From positions 1-34,815 of the forward strand of contig FLMG01002199.1 of the NCBI GenBank assembly GCA_900088475.1: 34,815 nt of DNA, written 5' to 3'. Each line of letters begins with the position of its first letter. The first letter of the stretch is position 1. Source of the DNA: Hyphochytrium catenoides (Eukaryota; Protista; Hyphochytriomycota). Below the pieces are notes generated by a model, which was not told the origin of the DNA, did no database searches, and worked only from the letters and a program-made list of their open reading frames with translations. Position numbers and translations under genes: made by a program. Below, piece by piece: positions 1 through 25,955 of this stretch.

Positions 1-912
1 CTCTCTCTCTCTCTCCCCTTTCCCTTCTCTTTGCTATCTCCTTTCTACCTCCTCCTTGCTAACCTTCCTCACTTGCGTTGGCCTCGTCTTTCTCCTTCAG
101 TCATCGTTCGCGTGTGCATCTGCTTATCGGACTGGTCTGTCAATATAGCCATTGACAGTGCATCCTCTGGCGTAGTGGGGAGGCAGGCATTGCTGAAGAG
201 AAAGGCCCACACTTCCACCTTTCCTTTCCTTTCGGCACCTCGTTGTCTCTCAGTCTCTCTCTTCTTCTCTTTACTCTCTCTCTCTCTTCTCCGGCGCCGT
301 CTTCTGTCTAGCTCCAGCTAGTCTTGGATCTTCAAGGGTATGGGCTTATGTCCTCGGCTGTCGGCCCTTTGCCTTAGCTGGGCCGCGAGGGAGAGGTAGT
401 TCACCTTTCTCACATAATTTGGTCCTTATGGCTTCGCTGTCCTAGTAGGCTGCACTTGCCCCTCTCTCTCTCTCTTTCTCTCTCTCTCCTTTCTTTTGCT
501 CATCTCTTTCTCTCTCTCCCGCTTAGTCCTGCTTGCACGATCTCTCCTGCTGGTCCTATTGCTTTGTTCCTCTGTTTCTTTCTAAGTTTACCGCTGGCTG
601 ACGAGACTCCTGTCTGAGGGGAAGGATCTGACGTCGTTATTGGCTTTTCTCTTCCTATCTCTGTTCGACGGTGTCTCCTTCTCTCTGCCTCATTCCCACG
701 TTCCCTGTCTTCCTCTCTTGCCCACTATCTCACGCTGTCTTCCCCTGTCTCTCTCCCCCCTCGGTCTCTCTCTCGCACTCTGTCCCCCTCCCCCCTTCTC
801 TCTCTCNNNNNNNNNNNNNNNNNNNNNNNNNNNNNNNNNNNNNNCTCTCTCTCTCTCTCTCCCTCTCTCTCCCTTCTTACGATGCCATCTCCTCCCTCAT
901 TTATTGACACAG

Positions 913-6416: not shown

Positions 6417-7401
6417 TCATCGACCCAAGAGATGCCCGCAGTCCCCTCTACTGCCTTCATTTCCCTTCCCGTCACTGCTTCCAAAGCCAGAGAAGCAACG
6501 GCACTGCCCAGTAGACCTGGCCAACAAGAGAGGAGAGAGAGAAGCTTGTCAAACAAGGGAGTACGGTCGAACTGAGAGCTCAATCGAGTACTCTCTCTCT
6601 CTTTTCTCTCCTACCATACTTCTGTGTCAGGCTTTTGGTCCTTAAACTCTGTTCGCATTGACTGGAGCATTTCCCTGTCTTTCGGCCTTCTCGCATCGAA
6701 CCTCCTTCCCTCCTCCACCGTCAGTCTTCTCTCGTTTCTCCTTTCTTCCTAACCTACACCACATAAGATCTACCTTCCTTGCTTCATATCCTCCGGCTTC
6801 GGGCTTTTCTCTCTCTCTCTTTTTCTGTCCATCGCCTACCTGTCGCACATTCCTCTGTGGCTGCACTCAGCCCTCTCTCGCTGTCCTGCTACACTGAGAA
6901 TGCCTCCTAGAACCTCTCCGCCNNNNNNNNNNNNNNNNNNNNNNNNNNGAACAGCCAGAGGAGAAAGAGAGAGGAAGAGAGGTAGAGAGGAAGAGATAAG
7001 ACAGGGAAAGAGGCTGCTGACGAAGAGGGAAACCCTTGAAAATAAGAGCGTTCTCATTGATATTGAGAGGCTAGGTGCTGCACGAGTATGCGATGCAAGA
7101 AGAGACAACGAGCAAACAACTGATAATAGTCAGGCAGCAGATAGACTCTCTACCGTCCCATCCTTTCCTCTAAGTCGACCTACCGGTCTCAGTCAGAAAC
7201 TCTATGGTCAGAAAGTTTTGAGGTGCCGAAGGCGCAGAGCAGATTGGCGCGGAAGGAGACGTAGCCCTAATGGTCACCTCTCCTGACATGAAGAGAAGAG
7301 AAATATAGAGAGAGCAGAGACGTAGGCTTCGTCAGGAACGCAGGAACTCCTCTATTAACTCTCCAGCCCACCTTTGCGCTTCTCATCTCTCTTTCTCTCT
7401 C

Positions 7402-10661: not shown

Positions 10662-13176
10662 TAGGGAAAGAGGCAGGGAGAGAGACAGAGAGAGAGAGAG
10701 AGAAAGAGGGAAAGAGAGAGCGAAAGAGAGAGCAACCTAGGAGAAAGGGAAACAGGATCAGCGATTTAACCCAGAACCCCTACATAATAGAGCAATCGGA
10801 GGCGATAGAGACACAGAAAGGGTACCACTTACGGCCCCCCGTCTCCTATGAACTCGACGGCAACCACGCCCTGACCGTCAGGCGTGCAGAGCGCCGATGT
10901 CCCGTGATAAGAGACAGATACTTCAGATACCATGGGAAGGCTCTTATTATATCATATGTGGTTTTCAGGAGAGGAGCACGGAAAGAGAGAGGATGGGAGA
11001 AGAGGGAAGAGAAGGTAGGGCGATGAGAAGACCTAAACCCATAAGAGAGAAGATAGGAAAGGATTGGCTCAACTATCGTGCGCAGAATAGCAACGCCGAG
11101 ATCGTGGCAACGGAGGAGTGAAAGGAGAGAGAAAAGCTGAACGGCGAATGATGGAACGTACATCCAGGTAAAGCATTAAGCAGCTGCAGTCAGACTTTAG
11201 TGGGGAAGAACAAAGAATTTGATCTGCGCTACCAAGTGTACGGAGCAACAGGCGGAGGCTGAGACAGTCAGGGTGAGAGAGGAGATAGAGAACGAAGAGA
11301 GAGGAGAGTGGTGAGAGAGAAAGAAAGAGAGAGGGAGAGCAAAGAGAGTGCTTGAAAGAGAGAACTAGAGGAAACTAGAGGAAATAAAAGAGTAGAATAG
11401 CTATTCGATTATGTTCTCTCACCTCCAACGCCCTCTTGAGCTCTGTGGCGCTATAATGGGCCTTGACCTCTACTCTATGTCGCTTGAAGGAGAGCTCAAA
11501 GGCTCCCTTCAGCGCTTGACAGGAGAAGAGCTGAAGCTCTGTCTCTTGGCCCGCGGTCATGGGGTCATCTCCCCTTGGACAGGTCGCTAGGAACAGAAAG
11601 ACGCAAGAAGGAAAGAGGGGCGGTGATGACTACGGCGCGTTCCGAGGAAGAAGGGAAGAAAGATATATGTAAAGAGATCTTTTAGAGAGAGGAGAAAGAT
11701 CTTTAGGTGATGAGCAGCGTGAATCAGGAACAAAAATGGCGCAAAGTTCAATGATGTTCCTCTTTCCCACTTTCCTTCTCTTTCTGCTGTGTGTCTCTTT
11801 TTTTCTCTCTCTCTCTGTCTCTCTCTCTGTCTCTCACACACACACTCTCACTCTTCTCGGCTCTTCCTCTCTCTCTCGGCGTCTTTCTCTCTTTTTCTCT
11901 TTCTTCTCTCCCTTTATCATCTCCTCCATGTCCCCTGTCGATTGTGTCCCAAACTATGTTTGCCCTTCATTCTCTCACCTAATGAGCAGTCATGGCCCTC
12001 ATATCCCGGCTCACAAAAGCAGCCAAAGATAGAGTCTCTATCCCAGGCTAGGTCATAGGGAAAGTCGATCTCGCTCTCCGCATTTTCCTGAGCCAGTTCC
12101 TTCAGAGAGAGACACAGGCCTCTGCCATTGCAGTTATTGGGACAACTCACTAAGAAGACAAATCGTTTGGGAGCAGCAAACGAAATGAAACGGGGAGAAG
12201 AACAGGGAAGGGACGATTGAACAGAGAAAGAGTTAAAAGAAAGAGAGAAAAAGAGTAAGTGTGAAAGGCAGGGAGAGCGAGAGAGAGGGAGAGAGCGTGA
12301 GAGAGAGAGAAAGAGACAGAGACAGCAGGGGAGAGATCAATGAGTTTAAGGCAGATGAGACGGCTGGAAGATAGTAGCAGGTGTAAAGAAGTAAGAGCAC
12401 GAGCAGCAATTGAAGACATTCTCTCTCTCCGCTCGTCTACACTCTTTCTGGTTGTACCACTTACTCCTTTGGCAAGCAGCCCCTTCAAATCCTTTGTCAC
12501 ATTGGCATCTCCCCCGCTCTTTGTCACAGCTCCCTCTCCCACTGCACTCAGAGAGCTGCTCATGCACCATATCATTGGAGAGAGGAGGCCCGAACCAGGA
12601 GGAGCCCAGAGGGCAGGTTCCTGGTATATGTAGCAGAGAAGACGCGTCAGTGAGGAAGAGAGATGATCAATAATGGACCGTGATGGCCCGCGCGATGTGT
12701 TCCTTTGCGGTTTATCCGCCATCCTCTCTCCCTTCTCTTTCTCTCTTTAATACCTGCCCTTCTTCTCCGCAGCCGTCGAGATCGATTCACCAGTCTCTTT
12801 GGCCCTCTGCCTCAGTGTATGTTCGGGTCGCTGTCTTCATGGTCCGCATCTCTTTCTACTTCTCTCTTCCCTTCTTCTACCTCACGCCTTCTACCACTTC
12901 TCGTCTTCAAACACTTGCCGCTGTTCTATCATCTCTCTCTCAGACTCTCTGTCAGTGTCAGTAGCCAACAGCCCTGATCATTGACTTTGTCTTACGTTCT
13001 CGGCAGTCGACGCCAGTGTATCCCTTGGAGCACACGCAGTGATCGGTAGTGGTCTGACACTCGCCATGTCCGCTGCATATTCTAGGCGGCGAGAGTTGGA
13101 AGTTCATAGGACAGGAGAGAGTGACTGACAAGAAGGAAGAGAAGAGAAGAGTAAAGAGAAAGATGAGAGAGTCCAT
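6417..13176 (-). CDS. Secreted EGF/tenascin-like repeat protein, stramenopile mastigoneme (flagellar hair)/Sig-like family, ~690 aa, ~15 exons
   Basis: Phase-consistent GT-AG exons: 13176-12996, 12620-12465, 12149-11979, 11586-11423, 10942-10833, 10524-10373, 10148-9989, 9688-9606, 9287-9132, 8820-8593, 8304-8249, 7850-7724, 7282-7184, (N gap)-6840, 6516-6417 (TGA). Signal-peptide-like start MDSLIFLFTLLFSSFLSVTLS. Motifs CSGHGEC, CPxGxSWF..H...ECSxRGxCD..G.C.C..GF.GAAC, WD.D...GC.C..G..GHDC, CP.GDDP.T.GQ and SS(N/D)GKG..G..GDCG are typical of this family. Confidence 0.85.
7381..7476. repeat. (CT)n microsatellite in an intron
   Basis: Imperfect CT dinucleotide run of ~95 nt. Confidence 0.9.
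7955..8040. repeat. Compound (GA)n-(GACA)n microsatellite in an intron
   Basis: gagaga... followed by gacagacagaca... and then more GA repeats. Confidence 0.9.
8485..8530. repeat. Perfect 23-bp tandem duplication in an intron
   Basis: GAGAGAAGAAGACAAGGATCCTC x2. Confidence 0.9.
10630..10732. repeat. (GA)n microsatellite cluster in an intron
   Basis: Several GA runs read directly from the sequence. Confidence 0.85.
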
Positions 13177-13334
13177 TCTGCTGCCCTGTCCTCGGACTTC
13201 TCCGCCTTCGATTAGCAGCAGGGAAGGTCAAAAGGAAAGGAAGAAGGTGAAAAAGGGGAGAGAAGCAGTTTTGGTGGCTCAGATTGGCTTCTCTCCTTTC
13301 ATACTTTGCCTTAATCACTTCTTGATCCGAACAG

Positions 13335-13925
13335 ATGATGAGCGGCAAGCCTGCCTCCGACCTTGGGTGGATGATGCTTCGTCCAAGAGCACGGACGGCA
13401 CCAAGAAGAGGAACTATCTTCTGTCTGACCCCCGACGTAAGGGTACTCTTGGACAATCTTGACAGCCGAGGATCAAGAGAGCGAAGAAGAGACAGGAGGA
13501 GGGAGAGGGACGTGAGCNNNNNNNNNNNNNNNNNNNNNNNNNNNNNNNNNNNNNNNNNNNNNNNNNNNNNNNNNNNNNNNNNNNNNNNNNNNNNNNNNNN
13601 NNNNNNNNNNNNNNNNNNNNNNNNNNNNNNNNNNNNNNNNNNNNNNNNNNNNNNNNNNNNNNNNNNNNNATCTGCAGCCAAAGAGAACATTGAAGTGGAT
13701 GTCAAGATAGCGGTTCTCGATGGTTCAAGGGAGAGAGAGAAAGACATAAGGATGGCGATGATGATGGAGTCAAAAGGGAGAGAGAGAGAGGGAGAGGGAG
13801 AGAGAAAGGGAGAGAGAGAAAGGGAGAGAGAGAGAGAGAAAGGAGAGAGGGAGGAAGAGTCACTTGCAGACATGAGGCTTGAAACCACCGCGAAGAAAGT
13901 CGGTTACTACAACAAGGACCTGTGA
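13335..13925 (+). CDS. Hypothetical protein (orphan), interrupted by a 152-nt N gap
   Basis: ORF begins right after a polypyrimidine+CAG (13334), with a possible GTAAG donor at ~13437. The post-gap segment SAAKENIEVDVKIAVLDG...LADMRLETTAKKVGYYNKDL* is followed by an AT-rich 3'-UTR-like tract (13926-14010) facing the Nup96 stop. No recognised domain; the frame across the gap is unverified. Confidence 0.3.
   Translation: MMSGKPASDLGWMMLRPRARTAPRRGTIFCLTPDVRVLLDNLDSRGSRERRRDRRRERDVSXXXXXXXXXXXXXXXXXXXXXXXXXXXXXXXXXXXXXXXXXXXXXXXXXXXSAAKENIEVDVKIAVLDGSREREKDIRMAMMMESKGREREGEGERKGEREREREREKGEREEESLADMRLETTAKKVGYYNKDL
13518..13669. other. Assembly gap (N run); other gaps at 807-844, 2573-2608, 6923-6948, 25893-25946
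   Basis: N runs in the sequence; several sit next to CT/GA microsatellites. Confidence 0.99.
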
Positions 13926-14039: not shown

Positions 14040-17000
14040 TCATGCTTCTTGCTGCCGCCAGTGGACGAAGCGCTGGAAGATGTGAGGCAGGTGCTCAGAC
14101 CTGAACTTCTCTCCAAAGTAGTCAGAAGAGGAAGAGGCGCAGAGCTGCTCGAGCTTCGCGCTGTCGAGAAAGAAAGGAGGAGCACGACCTGTCTCTTCCT
14201 CCTCCCCCAGCGCATCCTTGAGGTCCTCTAGCTTCAGCCGTAGGGCTGTCGCTCTCACTAGCAACAAGGGGTGGATAGAAAGAGCAGTTAGGTGTCAGAG
14301 AGCAGCAATAATCGGAAAGAAAGAGAAAGAGCGAAGAAGAGACAGAGAGCAGAGCCCAAAGAGTTTTAGGGTTAGGGTTAGGCAATCTGCTAGAGAGAGA
14401 GATGGCTGGCAGAAGAGGGAAAGAGGGATGGCTTGTTTACCTGATAAGAAGTGATACATAGAAGAGATGCAGACTCTTTGCTTCCACTCGTCTTCTTCCA
14501 AAATCCAGCCAGTTGATGGCCTCCAATGCCTATGACGACGACAGAAGCTGAGTCCTAGTCCTTGCCACCAGTCGCGACCTCTTTCTAGTTTCTCTTCCCA
14601 TCCTAAGGTCTAAAGCACCTCTTCCCCGTAACTTTCGCCCTTTCTCTCAAATCGTTATCACTGTCTCGAGGAGCTTCCTCACGTGCTCAGTGCACCTGCT
14701 CTCCCCTACTCCCACTCTAAGACCTCACCTCAAGTTGGCGGACACCCTCTCTATCTCCTCGAGGAACATCTCTAGGTTCTCCCTCAGCTTCAGCCAGTCC
14801 GCCGTGTCCTCGAGCTTGTACTCCAGCAGACGGAGGTATTCTAAGTATAGACCACCGTTGAGGCCCCACTCCTATTGAAGAACGCCGTTAGCCTCTAAAA
14901 GAGTAGGTCCCACCAACCTAGCGGATAGCGGAGAGACGATCGAGTAATAGAAAGAAAAACATGACAGAGAAGAAGCTCGAAGAGCGGCCACAGCACGACT
15001 GTCAGGTAGGGTAGGAAGATAGTCAGGCAGGAAGAACCCAGTGCCTGCTTATCGCTCTTTCAACTTCCTCCCTCTTCTCTGTCTCTTTCCCATTCTGTGG
15101 ACGCGAAAAGCGACATCTTTCTCTTTCTCTCTCTTCCCTTCACCTTCTCAGCCTGCCCCTTCTCAGCCTGTCTTTAGCTTACCGATAACTGCGAGAGGTC
15201 GTCGCAGCCTTCCTGTATGGCCTCCAGAATCTTCCTGAGCACCGAGTAGTCTGCTTGGAAGATGCAAGACGGTGACAGCCTGTGGCAACAGACCCTGTGC
15301 GCCTCCTCCCACTCTCTGCAGGCAATAAGCTGGGCGATCTCCTCTGAGTAGTTCCGGTCGTAACGAGCGCGAATCGACTTCGCCTCCGCAATCCACTTAG
15401 CAATCAGCGCCAACATAACGACCAGCATGGGCGAGAGAAAGAGAGAAAGAAGAGAACCAACAGATGAATGTTAGCTAAGCTGGATCATAACTCATGCTCA
15501 GGTAGCCGATGGCTCGGAAAGGGTCTCTCTGCGGACCAAAAGCTCTTTTTTCCCTTCTTCCTAGCGCGATCGACCCAGTTCCCCGCTAACTCTGGCTGGT
15601 TCGACGCATTCTCTTCAGTTCTCTACGCCCCGTTCTAGCTCTCGGTCAAAGTATAGCCGTCCCTCTCTTGTCTCTCGTTTCCAGTGTCTCACGTCGAAAT
15701 TTCCGTCACTTAGGTCATAAAGTTGTTCGCTGCACTACTTTGACTAAGAACTTACAGTGTCTGGCACTCTCAGCCTCTGAGTGACAAACTCAACCTTCTC
15801 CTTGTACTCTTTGCTATCGTAGAAGCTCCAGTGCGGGCAGTTTCTGTGGAGAATGGCGCGCACTGCGGCTTCTCTTCTCTGTTGATCTGGAAGAGAAAGC
15901 GCCACATACACAGCCCAATGCCATTCTCCCCTCTCCTCTAACTCCCGCTGATATGAGGAGAATATAATAGACTTTGCCTCTATGTCAACATTCTGCCCAA
16001 GTGCCTGCAGAAAGCCAAAGGAAAAGAAATATGAACAACTTGTAAGGCGCAGCTTGCCAGGTCTCCTACGTCAACCCCTTTCAGGTGTCCGTCTCTCCAC
16101 ATGTTCAGACTGCACTCCTTTCTCATGGTGTCTCTCTCTTGCTCTTGTACTCTCTTCTTTCTCTCTCTCTGTTCCTCGAAGTCGAAGTTCGTTGTTCTTT
16201 GGCAGCGGATGTGGTACTTTTGCACGCCGCTCCCGCTGTCCCGACCATAAATACCCTTCTGTCACTCTAGTTCCCTGCATTAGCATATCCATGTCCCTGA
16301 GTCCCCCGCCTACCTCGAGTATGCTGCAGAGATGCCATGAAAGCGAATAGTCTAGAGGGTTCGAAGTGTGAGAGAAAGAGTCCAGCACGGCCCGTATGCC
16401 GCTCCCAGTGCTGCAGTACAAGCTCATCAAGTGGAAGAGGATGTCCCTCTTGCCCTTGAGCCACTGGCGCACATCTCGCTGTTCCTCACTCTCCCCTAGC
16501 TCGTCTTCTCTCTCCAATCTCTCTCTAACATAGGCTGGCCGCGGCACCTGCACAAGACCCGCCTGTTCTGCCTTAGAGAAAGCATCGAGTGCATCACCTA
16601 GCCTCTCTCCTGGCCCATGCCGGTACCACAGGAAGAGGCCTAAGGCAGCCTTCCAGTCTAAGCCCTTCAGCCTATCAACCTTAGGACAGCCAGGCAGAAA
16701 GGATAGCGTGAGATGTGAAAGATGATATAGAGTACCGTCTATGGGAGGCAAAAGTCAACCGAAGCGTGAAACGGAGGGTAGAACGTCCAGCAAGATCTCA
16801 GAACTTCCATCAGGCAATAAGAGAATAATAGGGCCAACAGAATAGAAGAGTAACACTTGCTCTTTACTCTTCGTCTATCCAGGACGAGGTCTGTCGATAG
16901 TTCATGCAAACGTACATTCTCAACATTTCCCGCCATCAGCTCGTAGAGACGTATGATACCGCGATCAATGTGGGCTGCACTACCGTCTTGGTACCAGAGC

Positions 17001-20000
17001 TCCAGCTAAGAGTGAGAAAGAGAGAACATCTTAGAACGCCCAAGAAGAACTTCAGTACCAAGACACTCTAGACTAAATGTTGCCGCCCCATAAGCGGAGG
17101 CAGGGACAGCGAGTGGAAGTTCTTATAGAGTCTTGAACCATGTAATCCAGCTTATCCCGCCGCCACCAGCCTGACATGCCTCCGCAACTTTTGTTCTTAC
17201 CTGGTCTTTGATGCTATCCCTAAACTCCTCATCATGGTAACCTTGTATCTGGGCGAGAAGGAGAGAGAGACGAGGACAGCCAGAGCGAAAAGCAATCTCC
17301 GCTGCATCCTCAACTTTGTTTTCACAAAGCCTCTCAAAGATGAGAGAGAGATCATCAGATTCGGTCCCTCTTTCTCTGTCGTCTTCTCTACCAGCAAGGA
17401 CGTCTCTAAACCAGGAAGATATCGCTTCTCTCCTCCTATCCAATAACTGGTAATTTGAGAGATCATCGAGCAATCGACTGTCAGCATCCACAGGCATAAG
17501 CTCTTTCTTTGACTCTTCGGGATCTTGAGTGGTCCGCTCCTGCCCAGGCACCAAGAGAGCGGGGAGTTGTTAATAGGGCTACTGTGTATGGATGCAGTGA
17601 TAGGAGACACTAGGTGGCACATTTACGGACTTAAGAGACTTTCTCTTAGTCTCCACCTTTTCAATGAGATAGCTCGAGCGCTCACCTGGCCCCAAAGAGC
17701 ATTTACTAGCGTCCAGACCCTTGCCTGTACGACCGTCGAAGGAGAGGACGAATGCAATCCTTGCCCAGCAAATGCTTTGACATAGCTCTGAAGAGTGGGC
17801 GCCATTGCAGCCGCTCCTTCAGGGAGTGAGAAACACTTGACGGTTTCCCGACCTGTGACAGTAGCGAAAGAGAGTAATAAGGCCATCAGGAACAAGACTC
17901 CACGCGCAAAGTTTTAGCGAGATAACAAACAAGAGATGAAGAAATGCTTAAGAGCATCTGTGCTTACCGGTGTCTCCTTCTTCTACGGTTCCAGAGGTGG
18001 CTTCGAGATGTACTTGTAGTCCTAAGGTTGGCGAGAGTTTGGAAGATGCAGCCGGTGGGCTGTTGCTGGCGTCTCGCCTAAAGAGAGAGAGGGGTCGCTC
18101 CAGGAGCACACGGTGGGTCCGTCCCACCTGCTCGTCCGCCATACATAGACTACGCCCGAGGTTCACCAGTTCCCCTATGAAGACGAGGACGATATGGCAA
18201 GACCCAAACGAGATAGAACGCTAGTCAGAACCAATGCTAGCGATCCGGCAGAGACTAGAGACAAGATGAACCTGCGAGACAACGAGGTACAACCACGAAG
18301 GAAGAGGGAAACCTCAAAGTGTCACAACGAGAGATCCAACCGGACTGAGCTCTTACCGTTAGGTCCCCAGGAACATCTGAAAGATCGGCCCAGAAATAGC
18401 GCCATATCCGTTCGGGACCGAACCTTCCCAGGCCCATCCATAGCCTCAGCGGCGATTTGGAAGGTCCGAGAAGATGTATCTGGAGCTCGCTTAAAGGGGA
18501 AATCAGGAAGAGTGAGTATGGAAAGAGAATGCTAGTTCCAACGGATCAAGGAAGAGCAAAAATTAAGAGACAGGTATCCCCGTATCAGAGCGGATGAACA
18601 AGAGACAATGGCCCAAGGAAAGACAGAAAAGAGGAAAATCATTGAGGACGTTCGCCGGAAGAGAGTATGCAGTGCTTTATGCAGGACCTGTTCCATGGAG
18701 TAGAAGGCGGCAGGAGGCTTTATCATAGCCACAGCGACTGATGGAGGTGGGAGGAGAGCCAGGGCAGATGCAGGAGGGCCCTCTGGAGCAGAAGATCGGG
18801 TTTGTGCAGCCCGAACGGAGCTTCGCGTCTTCATTTGATGACGGACGGGGATTCTATTGGAGAGAATGAGAGAGGACAACGGTTAAACGTTACCTACAGG
18901 TAGGAGCTCCCTTCTCTTCTTTCTGTTCTGTCAATAACTCTAACCCTACATCCGACAAGTGCGCGGTGGTCCATCCTTCGGTGAAGCCCCAACAAGGCTT
19001 TCGCTGACTTTGCCTCTAAGAACATCAAGGGGACTTTTCCACCGCTCAGTCTTCTTCCCCTTTCAATACTGATAAGTTCTAGAGCTTCCTGCACGATGGG
19101 ATGTGCGCCTTGGCATTCTCGTCACTAGGTCACTCCTAAGACCCCTAACGTTTCCCCCGAGGACTCACGAACCTTTCCTTCTTCAAACTTCTGGTCAGTC
19201 TTCTTTCAGCAACCTCTTGCCTCTCTCTGTCTTCTCTTGGCTTTTGTGGAAAGAATGAGGATTGCAGAGCATGGAGGTTCGATGGGTCCAAACCTAACTT
19301 CATAGGCAAGGAGCCAGCTAGAGTGGGAGGGGAAGACGAGGACCGAAGAGAATCTCTAAGATTGCTTCTAGCAAAATCGTTCTCCACGACCTCTCTTCCC
19401 TCTCCTTCTGAATCCTCTTCCTCCGAGTCACCAGGAGCTGAGAACTTGGAGCTAGCAGCTGAAAGAGGAACGAGAGGCGTAGTAGGCTTTGGAAAGGGTG
19501 TGGCTTTCTCTGTCACGCCACGGGCAAGATTCTTTCGTGGAGTGTCTCCAGAGTTGACCTTAGGGGACTTGTGGACGCCTCCCTTGGGTCTCTCTTCGTC
19601 ATCTTCATCATCACTATCGTCCAGGCCATATCGGGAGAAATGTTCAGCTCTGAAGCACCAGCGGCCAGTCTCAGGGGAGTAAGAAATAAGAGTGGCACCA
19701 CTCTTCGCTGTTCTCTGCTCCACCCTTCGCACATACTTCGCCCTTGCCTCGTCTGTGTCTTGTGCAGGAAGAATGCCTGATAGAACGCAAAACGGTAGCA
19801 AGTCAAATGAGAGAGAGGAGAGATGAAGAGAAAGCAACGGGTGAGTCTACCTTCTAACGTGATTATGGCTGGCTTGTTCAGTTCCTCGCCCTCTGGGGGC
19901 TTTTTCTCCTCATCTGGATAAACGGTGACCGCTCTTTGTCCAATATGAACCAATTCGTCCAGATCTAAACCACTAACGTCCGTCACGCCCAGCCACCGGA

Positions 20001-23000
20001 TCGACCCACAACCCTTACGGCCAATGGTGAAGTTCTCTACATTCCTTAGCTCCTTATCCGTCATGCGTTCTAACTCTTCCATAGGAGGATCTGTATAATA
20101 CCCATCACCTGTGAGGTTTGGGCAGTTAGGATTCTGTCTGGACTTTTCAGGACTGTTGGATCGCAAGGGTCCGTCCTCACTTGTCCGGCGAAGGAACTCT
20201 GAATATGAGCGGAACTTCTCTGATGGGGCTTGCTCCTGAAAGGCACCACTAACGTCTCCACCACGGCTCAGAGCCCCACGAGTAGCGGAGTATTCGCCTG
20301 GAGCACGGACCGGAGTGGGGCGTAGAATAGTTTCATCCTTTTCTAGAGCTTTCCATGGAGACGGCGAGGTAAGAGTTATGTCCTTCTGTGGTGGTCTCCT
20401 CACGTCCGTCTGCGGTGAAGTAATCTTCTCTCTGCCATCTTTCCCCGCAGCCATCAACAGCGAGGAGCCAGGGGTCTGAGAGGAGGGTGCAGTGGCCGGG
20501 AGAGACGGGTTGATGGCTACTTGCAGCCTTCGTGGCCCTCCAGGGGAAAGAAGCTCAGATATTCTGCTGTCAACGCCATCCATTATCACCCGCCCACCAA
20601 CTAAGACGATGAACTGTTCGGGTATGATGTTGGGACGATAATCCACTAGCTTCTTTCGCAAATCTCCGACTGTGAGTTCCTCTGAGAAGTCGACCTTCAC
20701 TGCCTCTTCCTTGTCCATAAAGATGACCTCTAAGCTCCTTGTATCTGTCTCCGTGGTAGTCCCATCTATTGCTTGAACTCCATCCGACGGAGGGAGAGCA
20801 AGAACGCCTCTGGTTGTATCTGATTCTCGCTGCCTGTCTGCAGATTTGTCAATAACCAGATGCTTGGGGTTTCGGCTTAGGAATAGATCTGGGCTCATGG
20901 CATAAGCATCAGTACCGATACTCGACATTGTGCCTTTGCCTTTCAGAAAACCTTGAAGGCCTAGGTCCCCATAGCCACGAGGGAGGATGCGTACTGCTGC
21001 CCTGGGTGTCCTGTACATCGTCCCAGCGGAAGCGCTCAGGGCTGTTTGGGACGTCGCTGCCTTGCTCTTGTCTCCTAGCCCAACCGCCACAGTCTTAGCT
21101 CCAGCGTCAGACTTAAGCGGTAGGGCGAGGGCGGCCTTAACCTGCTGCTCTAAGAGACCTGCTCCTGCAGCTCCTGCACCATAGGGATTAACGTTATGGC
21201 TGGCTACCAGTTGTGCTGGAGCCATACCGGGGGCTGCTCCTTGGGCTGCTGGCGCACCAAAAGCGCCAGTACTGGACCCTAGAGATCCAAAAAGGGGAGC
21301 AGCCTGGGCTGTCGAAGGTGTGGAGAAAAGCGAAGACCCTGTGGCTCCGCCACTACCAAAAGAGGAGCCAAAAAGACCCCCTCCAGTCCCTGTTGAAGGT
21401 GTAGAGAAGGAGAATGAAGAGCCAGGAGTTGTCCCGAAGGCACTGCCAGAAGTCCCTGTGCCCCCAAAAAGAGATGACGTGGAAGAGGATCCTCCCCCAA
21501 ATAGACTGCTTCCAGTAGTACCAGGCCCAGCAGAAGGAGTCGAAGTAGAGCCTCCAAATAGAGAACCACCAGGTGCACTGCCGAAAGTGCTAGAGGAGGA
21601 AGGGGTTGAGCCGAAGCTGAAGGGAGAAGAAGCGGCTGTTCCTCCTCCAGTAGCGCCAAACGCGGGAGCGGTAGAGGTAGTAGAGCCAAAGCTGAAGGGT
21701 GACGAAGAGGGGGTCGTGGAGCCAAAGAGACCTGTCGACGGTGTACTTCCAAACCCTGCAATCGGAAGCAAGCAGAAATGAGTTCGACAAGGGCCAGCCG
21801 ACAGGAAATGTAGCAGAGGAGACATGGCTAGCAGTAAGGTAGAAGTGTCTAAAGATACGGTGTGTATACATATGCACCAACAGAGATACACTCTTAACAT
21901 GAAGAAGATCTCACAGACAAGCAGGCGGCTCAGCATGCTTGCAACTAACAAGGCATTACGACAAGGTAAGACAGGAACGATAGAGTGCGATACAGTCAAA
22001 TCTTCAGCTCTCAGATAGAAGAAGATGGAGGACGAAGACCAGCGGGAGGATATGAAACCAGAAGAACACATCAACAAGACCATGACTCTATCAAAAGTCC
22101 TAGCTCGTACCAGTGCCAAGCCCTGTAGAAGCGGTGGCTGGCTTGAAGCTTCCGAAACCTGTGCTAGCCGTGGGTGTGGCCGAAGACCCAAACGGTGATG
22201 ACGCCGCAGGTGTAGTGCTCCCAAACAGCCCTCCGCCGGTCGCCGTAGAGCCGAAGGCAGATGAGGCGGGCTGGCCAAAGGCTCCAGTCCCTCCTGAAGG
22301 CGTAGTAGAGAATGGACTAGCTGCAGTGCTCGCAGTCGAGCCAAAAAGGCCTCCTCCAGTACTTCCGAGGCCACCTGCAGCGGTGCCACCACCACCGAAG
22401 GGAGAAGGGGAAGGCTGAGTGGAGCCAAACGCGGACGATTGCCCAAAAAAGCTGCTCGTAGAGGACCCTGCGGGTTGAGAGCTGCCAAATCCTCCAGAGA
22501 GGCCCCCGAAAGTGGATCCTCCGGCTCCAAATGCTCCTGTGGTAGCTCCTGGAGCTGCCGCTCCTACAGACGACCGTCCAGTAAGGGAGATTAGTGAGTC
22601 AATAGCTACTATATGTATATACTAGACGATACAGAGAAAGCAAGGCGGTACGGCTAGGGACGCTGCAGCTGACTACTCTAGGGGAGAGAGACGAGAGAGA
22701 AGGGCGCCATGCAAAAGGTAACCAGAAGTCGAGATAATAGAAAGAGAAGACTATAGTGTCAGAACAGGGAAACATAGAGTCTTGAAGGTGATATTCTATG
22801 ATACCTGGATTCCCTTTCACTCCTTTTTGATAGTCTTCCCATCGTAGCTCCTCAGGACTCTTGTGCAGGTACTGGGGCATTGCGCTGATGGACATGAAGA
22901 CGTGCCCGCTAGCATCTTTATCCTAGTGAATTTATACATAAATGGTAGCCAACACGGAGTTAGGCACTCAGCAAACGAAGAGATGGTGATAACCGTCAGT

Positions 23001-24897
23001 CAGCATGGCTGACAGCGGAGCCTACGAGAAAGGCATAACTGGACAAAAAATATGAGGGAGCGAGTGGTAGAAGGGAGATGCGGCGGGAGAGAGTTAAAGA
23101 ATACATTGCAACGCCTAAGTAGCGCCTTTCACGAAGAGGAACTAGGATTTTAGGAGCGGAGACCACCACGAAGGTAAACCTTTCCCTAAATTCCTTCCCT
23201 TGGGCTTCTGCCTCCTTTTCACCCGTTCTCCCTTCCACCCTAACTTCTCTGATCCTATAGTTTCTCACATCTTCCGGCTTGAAAGGCGGGTTTCCAGTTC
23301 CATTTGTGGCAGGGCCAAAAGTTGAGCCAAAAGCTCCTCCTCCGCCAAAAGTGCTTGAGCCAAAGCCTCCAGTGGGCTGTGTCGAGCCGAAGGTACTCGT
23401 CGATCCCCCGAAAGGAGAGGGAGAGGTCGTAGCGCCAAACGGAGATGTAGATGTGGTGCCAAAGGCAGAGGTAGAAGTAGAGCTAGCGCCAAAAGGAGAA
23501 GGGGATGAAGCCGGGGCTCCAAAGGGACTGCTAGTCGCTCCGAAGGCAGAGGTTGAAGGAGCACCAAATGGTGAGGCGGTAGTGGTGCTTCCAAAAGGGG
23601 AGGTGTTGGCCGCTGGCGTCGAAAAGGCAGATGTCTGGGCACCGAAAGCTCCTACAATGCAAGAGTAGAGGGATGAGTCCATCCACCATTCAGGGTTCCC
23701 GTTGCAACAAGACGGAGAAGACAATAGCAAGGCGATTCACATTCGGAAGACACATAGAACGAGGCCCAAGACGAGAAGGCTGGATATGAGGACAATGGAC
23801 CTTGTGATAGCATAAGCAAAGACAATCGTCCGGAGTGATGTTAGACAAACAGACGAGGAGCAAGTGCAGCCAGATACTACCAAGCGGAGGATTAAAGTTT
23901 GGAGCAAGGGAAGTAATATCGGTGCCGAGGTGAGAGAGGAGCTAAGCGCTGCTGTGCGAGTAAGCTCACACAACTAACGAGAAGAAGAATGCCTACCCGT
24001 TCCGGAGGTAGAAGCTCCAAAAGGAGATGGACTTGAGCTGCCAAATGTTGTTGTCCCGGAGCCAAAGGCTGGTGCAGGAGTACTCTAAAAGTGAACCAGG
24101 GTCAGGGTTGCAGGCAGCAGAGGAGGATCAGGAGCCGCAACAATAAGTGAGGAGAGGATTGAGAGTCCAAACAGCAAAGGAGACAAGACAGGGCTTGCGA
24201 CAGAGGGTCATGAAGGACAAGGAGCGGGTCACACAGAAGTGATAGAGGGAAGCCCCCCAAAGTAACGGAAAGGGTAAATAACACGGCAGAAGCACGGGGA
24301 AAGAAGAATAGAAGTAGGAGACTGATGCACGCAGCAAAGAGAGAGGAATCAAGGGGATCGGCAGGAGGATTGTTAGCACGTACAGAGCCAAAGAGCGGTT
24401 TGCTCGCTGTTGATCCAAAGGTGCTGGTGCCTCCAAAGCCCTATGGAGCGTAGTCAGGTTTCGTTGCGGCGGCGGATGAAGAGCAGCTCGAGAAAATTGA
24501 AGGGAGAGAGGAGCCAAGAGCGCAGAGACAACGAATTTGGCCGACAAGAAAGACAGAGGCTCAGGGTAGACCATAGCTTGAGAGACTAAAGCAACAAAGA
24601 AAGCCCCCGCTGGCTGCTTTAGTAACTTACCGTGTTGCCAAAGCCGGGAGTAGTGCCGGTAGTTGAAGCACCAAAGCCTGACGAAGGCGTAGAGCTCCCA
24701 AACAGCCCGCCACCGGCGTTCGTTGTAGAGCCGAACGCTACATGTCATTGTCAACGCGTGACCGTAAGAAGAGGAAAGCGTGCAGTGAGAACCACTGAGG
24801 ACTACTTGTTACCTGGCGTCGTGGACCCCCCAAAGGGCGAAGAAGTGGCTCCAAATGGCGAAGAAGAGGAGCCGAAGGCTCCCGTGGTGCCAAACAT
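14040..24897 (-). CDS. NUP98: Nuclear pore complex protein Nup98-Nup96 precursor (~20 exons)
   Basis: Starts [16 protein letters not shown] at 24897. FG exons: 24897-24813, 24737-24631, 24440-24384, 24084-23997, 23651-23269. GLEBS exon 22922-22805. Then 22563-22111, 21755-19851 and 19776-~19173 (contains HF|SRYG). Nup96 exons: 18853-18688, ~18531-18357 ([18 protein letters not shown]), 18174-17968, 17852-17686, 17539-17201, 17005-16916, 16679-16314 ([22 protein letters not shown]), 16004-15756 (WHWAVYVAL), 15395-15183, 14871-14729 ([12 protein letters not shown]), 14529-14441, 14227-14040 (stop). Confidence 0.96.
19625..20124 (-). other. Nup98 autoproteolytic domain (Nucleoporin2/peptidase S59); cleavage between Phe (19639-19637) and Ser (19636-19634)
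   Basis: [29 protein letters not shown]...[35 protein letters not shown]|GI...[20 protein letters not shown]; intron at 19850-19777. Confidence 0.95.
20506..20733 (-). other. Ubiquitin-like (beta-grasp) domain within Nup98
   Basis: 76 codons, [76 protein letters not shown]. It aligns by eye with the ubiquitin pattern (TV.DL+.KL, IP.+Q..L...G+.L.D, +S+L, final beta strand). Confidence 0.7.
22805..22922 (-). other. GLEBS (Rae1/Gle2-binding) motif exon of Nup98
   Basis: [34 protein letters not shown], preceded by [12 protein letters not shown] in the previous exon; matches the SI.AM..Y..KS.EELR.EDY consensus. Confidence 0.93.
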
Positions 24898-25955
24898 CGT
24901 GGCTGTTCTCTGCTTCTTAACTTTCGCGTGAAGACTCGGTCACCTATATGTTCCTAGCTTTGAAGATAGCTGCACGGCCGTGGCGGCCGCCCCTGCCTGC
25001 AAGGAGGCGACGGCTTCGCCACTTCTTTAGTTCAAGGTACTAAGATATCTCTCGTCCTGGATAAGTGCAGCACTTTCTCTGTCTCAGTCTGCCCTGGTCG
25101 TAGGCAATGAATGAGCCGCGGCAGTGATGCTGCAAGAAGCTCGGCTGCCGATCCTCAAGCCATAGATTTTGAATTGCAATCTACATAAGGTGCTGGTCCC
25201 TAATATTATCTTAGGGGATCTGCCCTCCACCATCCGCAAAAATCTCTCCTAGGAGAGCTCCCCCTGGACAATAAAGTGTGGGTGGGGCCTTGGTTGGAGA
25301 CCCATCCGAGTAAATGTATATGAAATGGATATCACAAGGGTGGGTGGATTGGCTTCTGGGGGAGGTGTGAGACTTAATCTTTGTGTCTGTCATCATTCCG
25401 TTTCTCAGTTCTGAAGCTTTGCGGAGCGAATCTTCATGGATCTCCAGATTTAATATCTCTACCTGCACCGCCCAGCAGGCCAGCGGAGCGCGTGAGGGCG
25501 AGGCTGCCATGACGCTATGACTTGACGCTGCCTAACAAATAAGATAGCTTATCACGATAACTAGGGGCAGTAATGGTGGGAGCAAGCATTAGGGGCCATG
25601 ATCAATTACCAGTATAGAGAGGATCACTGCTACGCAGGTCCACGCGTCAGCAACTTCTTCTGTTAAAGTTTGTCTGCTCGCAGTGCCAAAGGGTTAGAGT
25701 CTTATGATCTATATAGAGTAGGATTCGGATTAGTGGAAGCGCTTTAGTTTATACTATCCCCGCAGCTATTTAAGCAGCAAGAAAGAAGAGAATGAGAAGC
25801 CAACGCAAGCGACAGACAGCAATTTCATTATGTTTGCTGCACCAGTAGGTGCAGACGGACGGCACAGTTTCCAAGTTAACTGTTAAAGAAATNNNNNNNN
25901 NNNNNNNNNNNNNNNNNNNNNNNNNNNNNNNNNNNNNNNNNNNNNNCTCGCCGCT

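What the first reader, a model, noticed from the sequence alone, without database searches (positions are those of the whole stretch)
20506..20733. Nup98 carries an embedded ubiquitin-like domain
Seen: between the FG repeats and the autoproteolytic domain, inside one long open exon and flanked by disordered linkers, lies a 76-aa globular-looking segment. Its pattern is ubiquitin-like: beta1 LEVIF, beta2 AVKVDF, helix [35 protein letters not shown] and beta5 RLQVAI, with no C-terminal di-Gly. Known: the Nup98/Nup145N/Nup100/Nup116 proteins I know have a largely unstructured linker here and no UBL. Integral UBLs commonly dock the proteasome (Rpn1/10/13), Cdc48/p97 cofactors or UBA/SIM proteins. 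Inference: this is a possibly undescribed lineage-specific nucleoporin fusion that could tether proteasomes or quality-control machinery to the nuclear pore, and it would stay on the Nup98 half after self-cleavage.
Basis: partly seen in the sequence, partly recalled or inferred. Interest (0 to 1): 0.8.

Follow-up and report, generated by a model that had tools for sequence, protein, structure and literature searches.

The report
Ubiquitin-like domain inside Nup98 linker
The nuclear-pore protein Nup98 of this oomycete-related protist really does carry a built-in ubiquitin-shaped domain, but water moulds such as Phytophthora and some uncultured eukaryotes have it too, and no paper I could search describes it or shows what it does.

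Summary
Window 20733..20506 encodes 76 residues in frame inside the large Nup98-96 exon (21756..19851). They lie between the FG repeats and the autoproteolytic domain.

The segment alone is weak evidence: Pfam ubiquitin scores E 0.03-0.09, below threshold, and a single-sequence AlphaFold model is poor.

I found equivalent domains at the same linker position in Peronospora, Phytophthora, Plasmopara, Bremia and Pythium, and in several unnamed eukaryotes. Some of these reach Pfam's ubiquitin or Rad60-SLD thresholds.

With 21 of them as the alignment, AlphaFold gives a confident beta-grasp (pLDDT 83.5). It superposes on ubiquitin at TM 0.83 and 1.9 A. The family profile hits Rad23 and ubiquilin UBLs in the PDB at E 1e-8 to 1e-7.

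There is no C-terminal Gly-Gly. The HF|S cleavage site lies downstream, so the domain stays on Nup98.

About 85 other Nup98 representatives lack the domain, among them amoebozoans, a red alga, a malawimonad and a hagfish.

So this is a lineage-wide feature, not special to this genome, and I found no paper describing it. Proteasome tethering is untested. No RNA run was listed.

The parts
20506..20733 (-). Ubiquitin-like (beta-grasp) domain, 76 aa, residues 600-675 of the open frame. It has no C-terminal Gly-Gly.
   Evidence: Translation. Pfam ubiquitin E 0.034-0.089, sub-threshold. AF2 with alignment A1: pLDDT 83.5, strand-strand-helix-strand-strand-helix-strand. Foldseek to ubiquitin TM 0.83, rmsd 1.9 A. 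hhalign against the 21 positional homologues: P 2.3e-5.
19851..21756 (-). Large exon of the Nup98-96 gene: FG repeats, linker with conserved short motifs, the UBL, a second linker, and the N-half of the autoproteolytic domain.
   Evidence: Open frame. Pfam PF04096 E 2.3e-29. Colinear tblastn matches to P. infestans Nup98-96.
21121..21195 (-). Linker motif [19 protein letters not shown], shared with oomycete Nup98 proteins.
   Evidence: Alignment. The motif search matched 32 of 199 sequences; all of the matched sequences that were in the APD tree lie in the clade that holds the window.
20845..20865 (-). KHLVIDK motif, the conserved Nup98 linker motif just upstream of the UBL.
20191..20217 (-). 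KFRSYSEFL motif downstream of the UBL (oomycetes have KRFMTYDEYL).
19777..19850 (-). 74-nt GT..AG intron, pyrimidine-rich, that splits the autoproteolytic domain.
   Evidence: Sequence. The spliced product restores a full domain colinear with the oomycete one.
19622..19776 (-). C-half of the autoproteolytic domain, with the HFS self-cleavage site at 19642..19634.
22824..22898 (-). GLEBS (Rae1/Gle2-binding) exon of Nup98.
   Evidence: tblastn to the P. infestans GLEBS region. Sequence ..[21 protein letters not shown].
22103..22590 (-). FG-repeat exon; exon ends are approximate.
   Evidence: Frame translation.
23270..23680 (-). FG-repeat exon upstream of GLEBS; exon ends are approximate.
15225..18513 (-). 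Nup96 half of the precursor, in several exons.
   Evidence: tblastn to P. infestans Nup98-96 residues 1326-1895.

Best explanation
The segment is a genuine, permanently built-in ubiquitin-fold domain (a UBL, not a modifier) in the linker of the Nup98-96 precursor of an oomycete-related protist. It was inherited from an ancestor shared with oomycetes, whose Nup98-96 proteins carry a homologous but fast-diverging UBL at the same position.

Shown here: the fold; its position between conserved linker motifs; the lack of a Gly-Gly tail; a location about 125 residues upstream of the autoproteolytic domain and upstream of the HF|S cleavage site; and stronger conservation than the flanking linker among oomycete orthologues.

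Inferred: after self-cleavage the UBL stays on Nup98. It therefore sits near the site where the autoproteolytic domain anchors Nup98 to the pore scaffold, and it acts there as a fixed protein-docking module. The docking face would be the beta-sheet around the conserved hydrophobic I44/V70-equivalent positions.

My estimates: about 80% that it is a binding module rather than an inert spacer. For the partner, about 35% a ubiquitin-receptor-type protein (proteasome Rpn1/Rpn10/Rpn13, or a UBA/UIM factor), about 35% another nucleoporin, and the rest something else.
For: - Translation and open frame.
- Nup98 identity: PF04096 at E 2e-29, the HFS site, GLEBS, a downstream Nup96 half, and colinearity with P. 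infestans Nup98-96.
- Fold: AF2 with a 22-row alignment gives pLDDT 83.5 and pTM 0.69 with beta-grasp topology. Foldseek finds 269 PDB hits at E<=1e-3, with ubiquitin at TM 0.83 and 1.9 A. The nearest ESM Atlas shapes are the BAG6, ubiquilin, Ddi1 and Rad23 UBLs at TM 0.69-0.73.
- Sequence: the family profile hits Rad23 UBL at E 7.7e-9, UBQLN3 at 1e-7 and mono-ubiquitin at about 1e-6. Relatives reach Pfam thresholds: P0001 ubiquitin 25.4, Rad60-SLD 24.5; P0016 26.6; P0077 25.7; P0008 Rad60-SLD_2 26.
- Homology of the window's copy: hhalign against the alignment without it gives P 2.3e-5 over 91 colinear columns.
- Core and hallmark positions are kept: the K27 equivalent is R/K in 22/22 rows, G47 is kept in 19/22, and the I44 equivalent is hydrophobic in 21/22 (mapping).
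- Constraint: among oomycetes the UBL columns show 0.57-0.75 pairwise identity, against 0.34-0.48 in the flanking linker.
- Phylogenetic clustering: UBL presence needs 5 changes on the autoproteolytic-domain tree, against 20.6 for shuffled labels (0 of 500 shuffles as low).
Against: - The window's own segment is below Pfam's threshold (about 14 bits).
- An HMM built from oomycete UBLs does not detect it.
- The single-sequence AF2 model was poor (pLDDT 53) and gave no significant structural hit.
- The confident model depends on an alignment I assembled from positional homologues.
- No RNA run was listed, so transcription and exon status are not shown directly.
- The ubiquitin receptor patch is only partly kept: the L8 equivalent is polar, the H68 equivalent is Asp in 16/22 rows, and the R42 equivalent is Glu in oomycetes.
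- The surface differs between the window and the oomycetes, so one shared partner is not obvious.
- Saprolegniales orthologues have only an undetectable, possibly degenerate version.
Confidence: 0.8

Rival explanations
1. The UBL is a structural adaptor inside the pore. It binds another nucleoporin, doing with a folded domain what short linear motifs of the Nup98/Nup145N linker do in fungi and animals, and it has nothing to do with ubiquitin-system receptors.
For: It sits among conserved short linker motifs. The ubiquitin receptor patch is only partly kept, and the H68 and R42 equivalents are acidic in oomycetes.
Against: No partner is known. The surface residues differ between the window and the oomycetes. 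The family's best sequence matches are the shuttle-factor UBLs Rad23 and ubiquilin.
Confidence: 0.3
2. It is a SUMO-like domain (as in Rad60/NIP45) that recruits Ubc9 or SIM-containing proteins to the pore.
For: Relatives pass the Pfam Rad60-SLD or Rad60-SLD_2 cut-offs: P0001 at 24.5 and 24 bits, P0008 at 26 bits. Nuclear pores are known SUMO hubs (general knowledge).
Against: The window's segment has no Rad60-SLD hit. Those Pfam models overlap heavily with ubiquitin. The top structural and profile matches are ubiquitin, Rad23 and ubiquilin rather than SUMO.
Confidence: 0.1
3. The segment is not part of the mature protein: it is an in-frame intron or a pseudo-exon, or the UBL resemblance is chance.
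For: No RNA run could be listed. The window's own sequence signals are weak.
Against: The frame is open for 635 codons, with conserved motifs in the same frame on both sides. No candidate GT..AG interval in the region has the pyrimidine content of the real intron (0.62 at best against 0.74). Annotated proteins of more than 25 relatives keep a UBL at this position. hhalign gives P 2.3e-5.
Confidence: 0.05
4. It is a cleavable ubiquitin-like unit, released or processed by a deubiquitinase.
For: None beyond the fold.
Against: There is no Gly-Gly or similar tail in the window or in any of the 21 homologues. The last strand runs straight into the linker.
Confidence: 0.02

Closest known systems
N-terminal UBLs of the proteasome shuttle factors Rad23/hHR23 and ubiquilin/Dsk2 (also the Get5/Mdy2, BAG6 and Ddi1 UBLs)
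   Same: These are integral, non-conjugatable ubiquitin-fold domains. They are the best single-domain sequence-profile matches (Rad23 E 7.7e-9, UBQLN3 1e-7) and among the best structural matches. The G47, K27 and I44 equivalents are kept.
   Different: Here the UBL is internal, embedded in a disordered nucleoporin linker, with no UBA, STI1 or other shuttle-factor domain. The L8, R42 and H68 equivalents are not ubiquitin-like. Receptor binding is untested.
Nup98-96 / Nup145 precursor family (Nup98, Nup145N, Nup100, Nup116)
   Same: FG repeats, GLEBS, linker motifs, the S59 autoproteolytic domain with an HFS site, and a downstream Nup96 half.
   Different: The described family members have an unstructured linker where this protein has a folded UBL. 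In my survey the representatives outside the two UBL-bearing clades show no UBL, including amoebozoans, Galdieria, Gefionella and a hagfish.
Oomycete Nup98-96 proteins (e.g. P. infestans 'Nuclear protein 96', Plasmopara halstedii 'nucleoporin 98', Pythium spp.)
   Same: Same architecture, with a UBL between the K(K/R)LVIDK motif and the RFxxYxE(F/Y)L motif.
   Different: Their UBL has a 10-20 residue loop after the helix that the window's compact 76-aa copy lacks. Sequence identity to the window's UBL is only 10-21%. Their database records list no ubiquitin Pfam domain.
UBL in Nup107 of the same genome and of oomycetes
   Same: A second pore scaffold protein of the same lineage is reported to carry an integral UBL.
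   Different: It is a different protein on another piece of the genome. I could not read or test it here.

Membership tests
Ubiquitin-like beta-grasp superfamily (Pfam ubiquitin clan) | Beta-grasp topology: strand-strand-helix-strand-strand-(short helix)-strand. | tested here: met
   The AF2 model with alignment A1 has E7-13, E18-24, H30-40, E49-53, E56-58, H66-69, E77-82 at pLDDT 83.5. Ubiquitin matches at TM 0.83 and rmsd 1.9 A. Caveat: the alignment was hand-assembled.
Ubiquitin-like beta-grasp superfamily (Pfam ubiquitin clan) | Significant sequence match to the ubiquitin family. | tested here: inconclusive
   The window segment alone scores 13-14.4 bits on PF00240 against a cut-off of 25.4. 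Homologues do reach the cut-offs. The family profile that includes the window hits Rad23 and ubiquitin in the PDB at E 1e-8 to 1e-6. The window against the family without it gives hhalign P 2.3e-5.
Ubiquitin-like beta-grasp superfamily (Pfam ubiquitin clan) | Hydrophobic core positions and the G47 and K27 equivalents conserved. | tested here: met
   with the mapping taken from the HMMER alignment.
Ubiquitin-like modifiers (ubiquitin, NEDD8, SUMO) | C-terminal Gly-Gly (or Gly) exposed by processing, for conjugation. | tested here: not met
   The segment ends ..[11 protein letters not shown]. None of the 22 aligned sequences has a di-Gly tail.
UBL-UBA proteasome shuttle factors (Rad23/Dsk2 type) | UBL plus UBA domain(s), and an L8-I44-H68-V70 receptor patch. 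| tested here: not met
   Pfam finds no UBA or other shuttle domain in the exon. The I44 and V70 equivalents are hydrophobic, but the L8 equivalent is polar and the H68 equivalent is Asp or Gln. This lowers 'is a shuttle factor', not 'binds a ubiquitin receptor'.
SUMO-like domains (Rad60-SLD) | Pfam PF11976 or PF13881 above the cut-off. | tested here: inconclusive
   Not hit by the window's segment. Hit above the cut-off by homologues P0001 and P0008.
Nup98-96 / Nup145 precursor | S59 autoproteolytic domain with an HF|S site. | tested here: met
   PF04096 at E 2.3e-29 on the N-half. The spliced product carries ..EHFSRYG...
Nup98-96 / Nup145 precursor | N-terminal FG/GLFG repeats with an embedded GLEBS motif. 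| tested here: met
   FG exons and the GLEBS exon. tblastn matches the P. infestans GLEBS region.
Nup98-96 / Nup145 precursor | Nup96 half encoded downstream in the same gene. | tested here: met
   Colinear tblastn matches to P. infestans residues 1326-1895 at 18513..15225.
Nup98-96 / Nup145 precursor | Self-cleavage actually occurs and the UBL remains on Nup98. | not testable with these tools
   Inferred from the intact HFS site downstream of the UBL and from established knowledge of the family.

The most novel reading that the evidence does not exclude
Oomycetes and their relatives have wired ubiquitin-fold docking sites permanently into the nuclear pore, on Nup98 (shown here) and reportedly on Nup107. 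These sites would station proteasomes, Cdc48 cofactors or UBA/UIM shuttle factors at the pore. That would be a lineage-specific, hard-wired link between nuclear transport and protein quality control, and other eukaryotes have no domain-level equivalent in Nup98.
Probability: 0.15. Interest if true: 0.75.

Novelty: new variant of a known kind. Interest (0 to 1): 0.5.

Why it matters
Nup98 is among the best-studied nucleoporins, and its linker is treated as a string of short motifs. A folded ubiquitin-like module conserved there across a whole lineage shows that pore architecture is more plastic than the fungal and animal models suggest. That lineage includes major crop and fish pathogens.

The finding gives a concrete, testable handle: one small, soluble domain for which a binding partner can be sought. 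It bears on whether pores in this lineage recruit ubiquitin-system machinery or use UBLs as scaffold connectors.

It also shows that routine Pfam annotation misses the domain. The public records of the 21 Peronosporales Nup98-96 proteins recovered here list only the Nup98 and Nup96 families.

Tried and rejected
- **Plus-strand reading** of the given coordinates: only stops.
- **Single-sequence AF2:** pLDDT 53. Foldseek rows were mostly ubiquitin-like but at E > 0.3, and the wide VIA-align search gave Z < 4. Uninformative.
- **phmmer of the segment against PDB sequences:** no meaningful hit.
- **Word-index protein search with the UBL region:** nothing. With UBL plus autoproteolytic domain: only 3 hits, all through the autoproteolytic domain.
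- **phmmer of the window's UBL against the 150 best Nup98 representatives:** no hit, which at first suggested uniqueness. I rejected that after reading the Peronospora protein by eye.
- **Oomycete-only UBL HMM, iterated:** never recruited the window. hhalign against the oomycete-only alignment gave only P 0.064.
- **Metagenome contig scan with the UBL:** 507 pattern matches, none confirmed.
- **RNA evidence:** no run was listed.
- **Saprolegniales (Aphanomyces, Achlya):** the segments at the same place look UBL-like by hydrophobic pattern, but Pfam, hhalign and the Atlas features gave nothing. Left open.
- **Naming the unnamed UBL-bearing proteins from their contigs:** only run and sample codes came back, no organism.
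- **Second Nup98 paralogue in the window** (as in Phytophthora): none found.
Full report
**Observation**

The quoted coordinates give only stops on the + strand. They are residues 600-675 of a 1005-codon open frame.

The true exon begins near 21756 and ends at 19851. In one frame it holds:
- FG repeats;
- a linker with the motifs [27 protein letters not shown] and KHLVIDK;
- the candidate domain;
- a second linker of about 124 residues with a KFRSYSEFL motif;
- the N-half of the Nup98 autopeptidase (Pfam PF04096, E 2.3e-29).

A 74-nt GT..AG intron (19850..19777) splits that domain. The spliced product continues into ..[12 protein letters not shown].., the HF|S self-cleavage site, at 19642..19634.

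Upstream lie FG exons and a GLEBS exon. Downstream, the Nup96 half is colinear with P. infestans Nup98-96 as far as about 15225. The gene is therefore a Nup98-96 precursor, and the segment lies on the Nup98 side of the cleavage site.

**Is the segment a UBL?**

Taken alone, the evidence is weak but consistent:
- Pfam ubiquitin is the best hit with four different boundaries and the only hit with three of them, but it scores only 13-14.4 bits against a cut-off of 25.4. ThiS, another beta-grasp family, appears once at E 0.17.
- Protein-language-model features point to ubiquitin-type clusters at 0.87-0.92.
- A single-sequence AlphaFold2 model had the right order of elements, but its pLDDT was 53 and it gave no significant structural match.
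- phmmer against PDB sequences found nothing meaningful.

**Finding relatives**

A HMMER search of 1.84 billion representatives with UBL + linker + autoproteolytic domain gave 2549 hits, all through the autoproteolytic domain. None was close enough to be this organism's own protein. phmmer of the UBL against the best 150 found nothing. The nearest proteins with a conserved linker showed only low-complexity sequence there.

Reading the Peronospora destructor protein by eye showed a clear UBL-patterned segment at the same position. It lies after K(R/K)LVIDK and before RFxxYxE(F/Y)L plus the autoproteolytic domain. On Pfam it reaches ubiquitin 25.4 bits (equal to the cut-off), Rad60-SLD 24.5 (cut-off 23.8) and Rad60-SLD_2 24 (cut-off 23).

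A word search seeded with that region found 21 Peronosporales Nup98-96 proteins: Phytophthora, Peronospora, Plasmopara, Bremia, Peronosclerospora and Nothophytophthora. Their stored Pfam annotation lists only PF04096, PF12110 and PF21240.

An HMM built from these detected the domain in three Pythium species and in several unnamed proteins. Four more unnamed proteins have it at or near Pfam thresholds: P0016 ubiquitin 26.6, P0077 25.7, P0008 Rad60-SLD_2 26, P0010 25.0. A further group (P0063, P0070, P0076, P0097, P0116) has a UBL-like segment just upstream of the autoproteolytic domain.

**Fold**

MAFFT aligned 21 of these segments with the window's copy in register from the first to the last strand (alignment A1).

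With A1, AlphaFold2 gave pLDDT 83.5 and pTM 0.69, with the canonical strand-strand-helix-strand-strand-helix-strand order. Foldseek then found 269 PDB chains at E<=1e-3. Ubiquitin 5dk8_A matched at TM 0.83 and rmsd 1.9 A over 77 columns, alongside the UBQLN3, Get5, BAG6 and NEDD8 structures. The nearest ESM Atlas shapes are the BAG6, ubiquilin, Ddi1 and Rad23 UBLs.

The A1 profile hits PDB sequences of Rad23 UBL (E 7.7e-9), UBQLN3 (1e-7), Mdy2/Get5 (1e-6) and mono-ubiquitin (about 1e-6).

The window's copy, compared by hhalign with the alignment from which it had been removed, gives P 2.3e-5 over 91 colinear columns.

Caveat: the confident model depends on an alignment I assembled from positional homologues. 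An oomycete-only HMM does not see the window's copy.

**Anatomy of the domain**

I used the HMMER alignment to ubiquitin for numbering. Ubiquitin's core positions are hydrophobic throughout the family. Other positions behave as follows:

| Ubiquitin position | In the 22 aligned sequences |
|---|---|
| K27 | Arg or Lys in 22/22 |
| G47 | kept in 19/22 |
| K48 | Arg or Lys in 19/22 |
| I44 | hydrophobic in 21/22 |
| V70 | mostly hydrophobic or small |
| L8 | polar in most rows |
| H68 | Asp in 16/22 (Gln in the window) |
| R42 | Glu in oomycetes (Ile in the window) |

No sequence ends in Gly-Gly. It is an integral UBL, not a modifier or a cleavable unit.

Among oomycete orthologues the UBL columns are 0.57-0.75 identical. 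The flanking linker is 0.34-0.48 identical and the autoproteolytic domain 0.75-0.86. The domain therefore behaves as a constrained folded unit.

**Distribution**

On a tree of the autoproteolytic domain (117 rows, quick IQ-TREE), the window falls in a weakly supported clade (SH-aLRT 82). That clade also holds the oomycetes and the unnamed proteins P0008, P0016, P0098 and P0077. UBL presence needs 5 changes on the tree, against 20.6 for shuffled labels (0 of 500 shuffles as low), and a single origin is not excluded.

The motif search for NPYG..GAGL(L/V/I)E matched 32 of 199 sequences. All of those that were in the autoproteolytic-domain tree lie in this clade, and P0016 carries a close variant seen by eye. 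The second UBL-bearing group lacks the motif.

Inside the clade, the short Phytophthora 'NUP98A' paralogues lack the UBL. Those of Nothophytophthora, P. cinnamomi and P. citrophthora are recorded with the same longest-contig length as the Nup98-96 gene, and the two Nothophytophthora locus tags are consecutive, which suggests they are neighbours. The Saprolegniales orthologues (Aphanomyces, Achlya) have only a UBL-like hydrophobic pattern that no tool recognised.

Named representatives outside the clade, in which the A1 profile found no UBL, are Galdieria, Cavenderia, Cavostelium, Clastostelium, Gefionella and a hagfish. For three of them, Cavostelium, Clastostelium and Gefionella, I also read the linker and saw only low-complexity sequence.

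Earlier notes of this scan call the organism a close relative of oomycetes. The tree and the motif agree with that. I did not determine the species.

**Mechanism**

Shown: a folded, non-cleavable UBL, conserved in a lineage, on the Nup98 side of the cleavage site.

Inferred: it is a fixed docking module held near the point where the autoproteolytic domain anchors Nup98 to the scaffold. The best sequence matches are shuttle-factor UBLs, and the I44/V70-equivalent face stays hydrophobic. The non-ubiquitin-like L8, R42 and H68 equivalents, and the surface differences between the window and the oomycetes, fit a nucleoporin partner equally well. I give each reading about one third. A SUMO-like role is less likely.

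**Literature**

Five full-text searches found no description of a UBL in Nup98. A paper on ubiquitin fusion proteins in algae does not mention nucleoporins. The library lacks most subscription journals, so this is absence in what I could search, not proof of absence.

**Verdict**

I class it as a new variant of a known kind, of moderate interest.

Noticed in passing
P0046, P0051, P0061 (Phytophthora cinnamomi, P. citrophthora, Nothophytophthora): Peronosporales have a second, short Nup98-only paralogue annotated NUP98A (about 720-810 aa). It is recorded with the same longest-contig length as the Nup98-96 gene, and in Nothophytophthora the two locus tags are consecutive, suggesting the genes are neighbours. 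It keeps the NPYG..GAGLVEQ linker motif but lacks the UBL.
   Followed up: partly
P0004 (656 aa, unnamed): The best autoproteolytic-domain hit carries two tandem Nup98 autoproteolytic domains in one protein and no UBL.
   Followed up: no
P0094:195-272 (Aphanomyces invadans), P0084:813-883 (Achlya hypogyna): Saprolegniales Nup98-96 proteins have, at the UBL position, a roughly 75-aa segment with a UBL-like alternation of hydrophobic residues. Pfam, hhalign and the Atlas features do not recognise it. It may be a degenerate UBL or a replaced domain.
   Followed up: partly
P0063, P0070, P0076, P0116, P0097 (metagenomic, taxon unknown; L002 holds P0116): A second group of Nup98 homologues carries a UBL just upstream of the autoproteolytic domain but lacks the oomycete-type linker motif. 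This is either an independent gain or a much older feature.
   Followed up: partly
window 11900-13200, minus strand: Several exon-like ORFs encode Cys-rich EGF/tenascin-like repeats (patterns such as CSGRGSC..C.C..G..G..C). This appears to be a separate gene downstream of Nup96.
   Followed up: no
window 807-844, 2573-2608, 6923-6948, 13518-13669, 25893-25946: Five runs of N (assembly gaps). The 152-base run explains the apparent GC dip at 13-14 kb.
   Followed up: yes
window 19777-19850 and many intergenic/intronic stretches (e.g. 11600-12000, 13700-13900): Introns and spacers are rich in CT/TC microsatellite-like tracts, which translate as SLSLSL ORFs. The confirmed intron is 74 nt and 74% pyrimidine.
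   Followed up: partly
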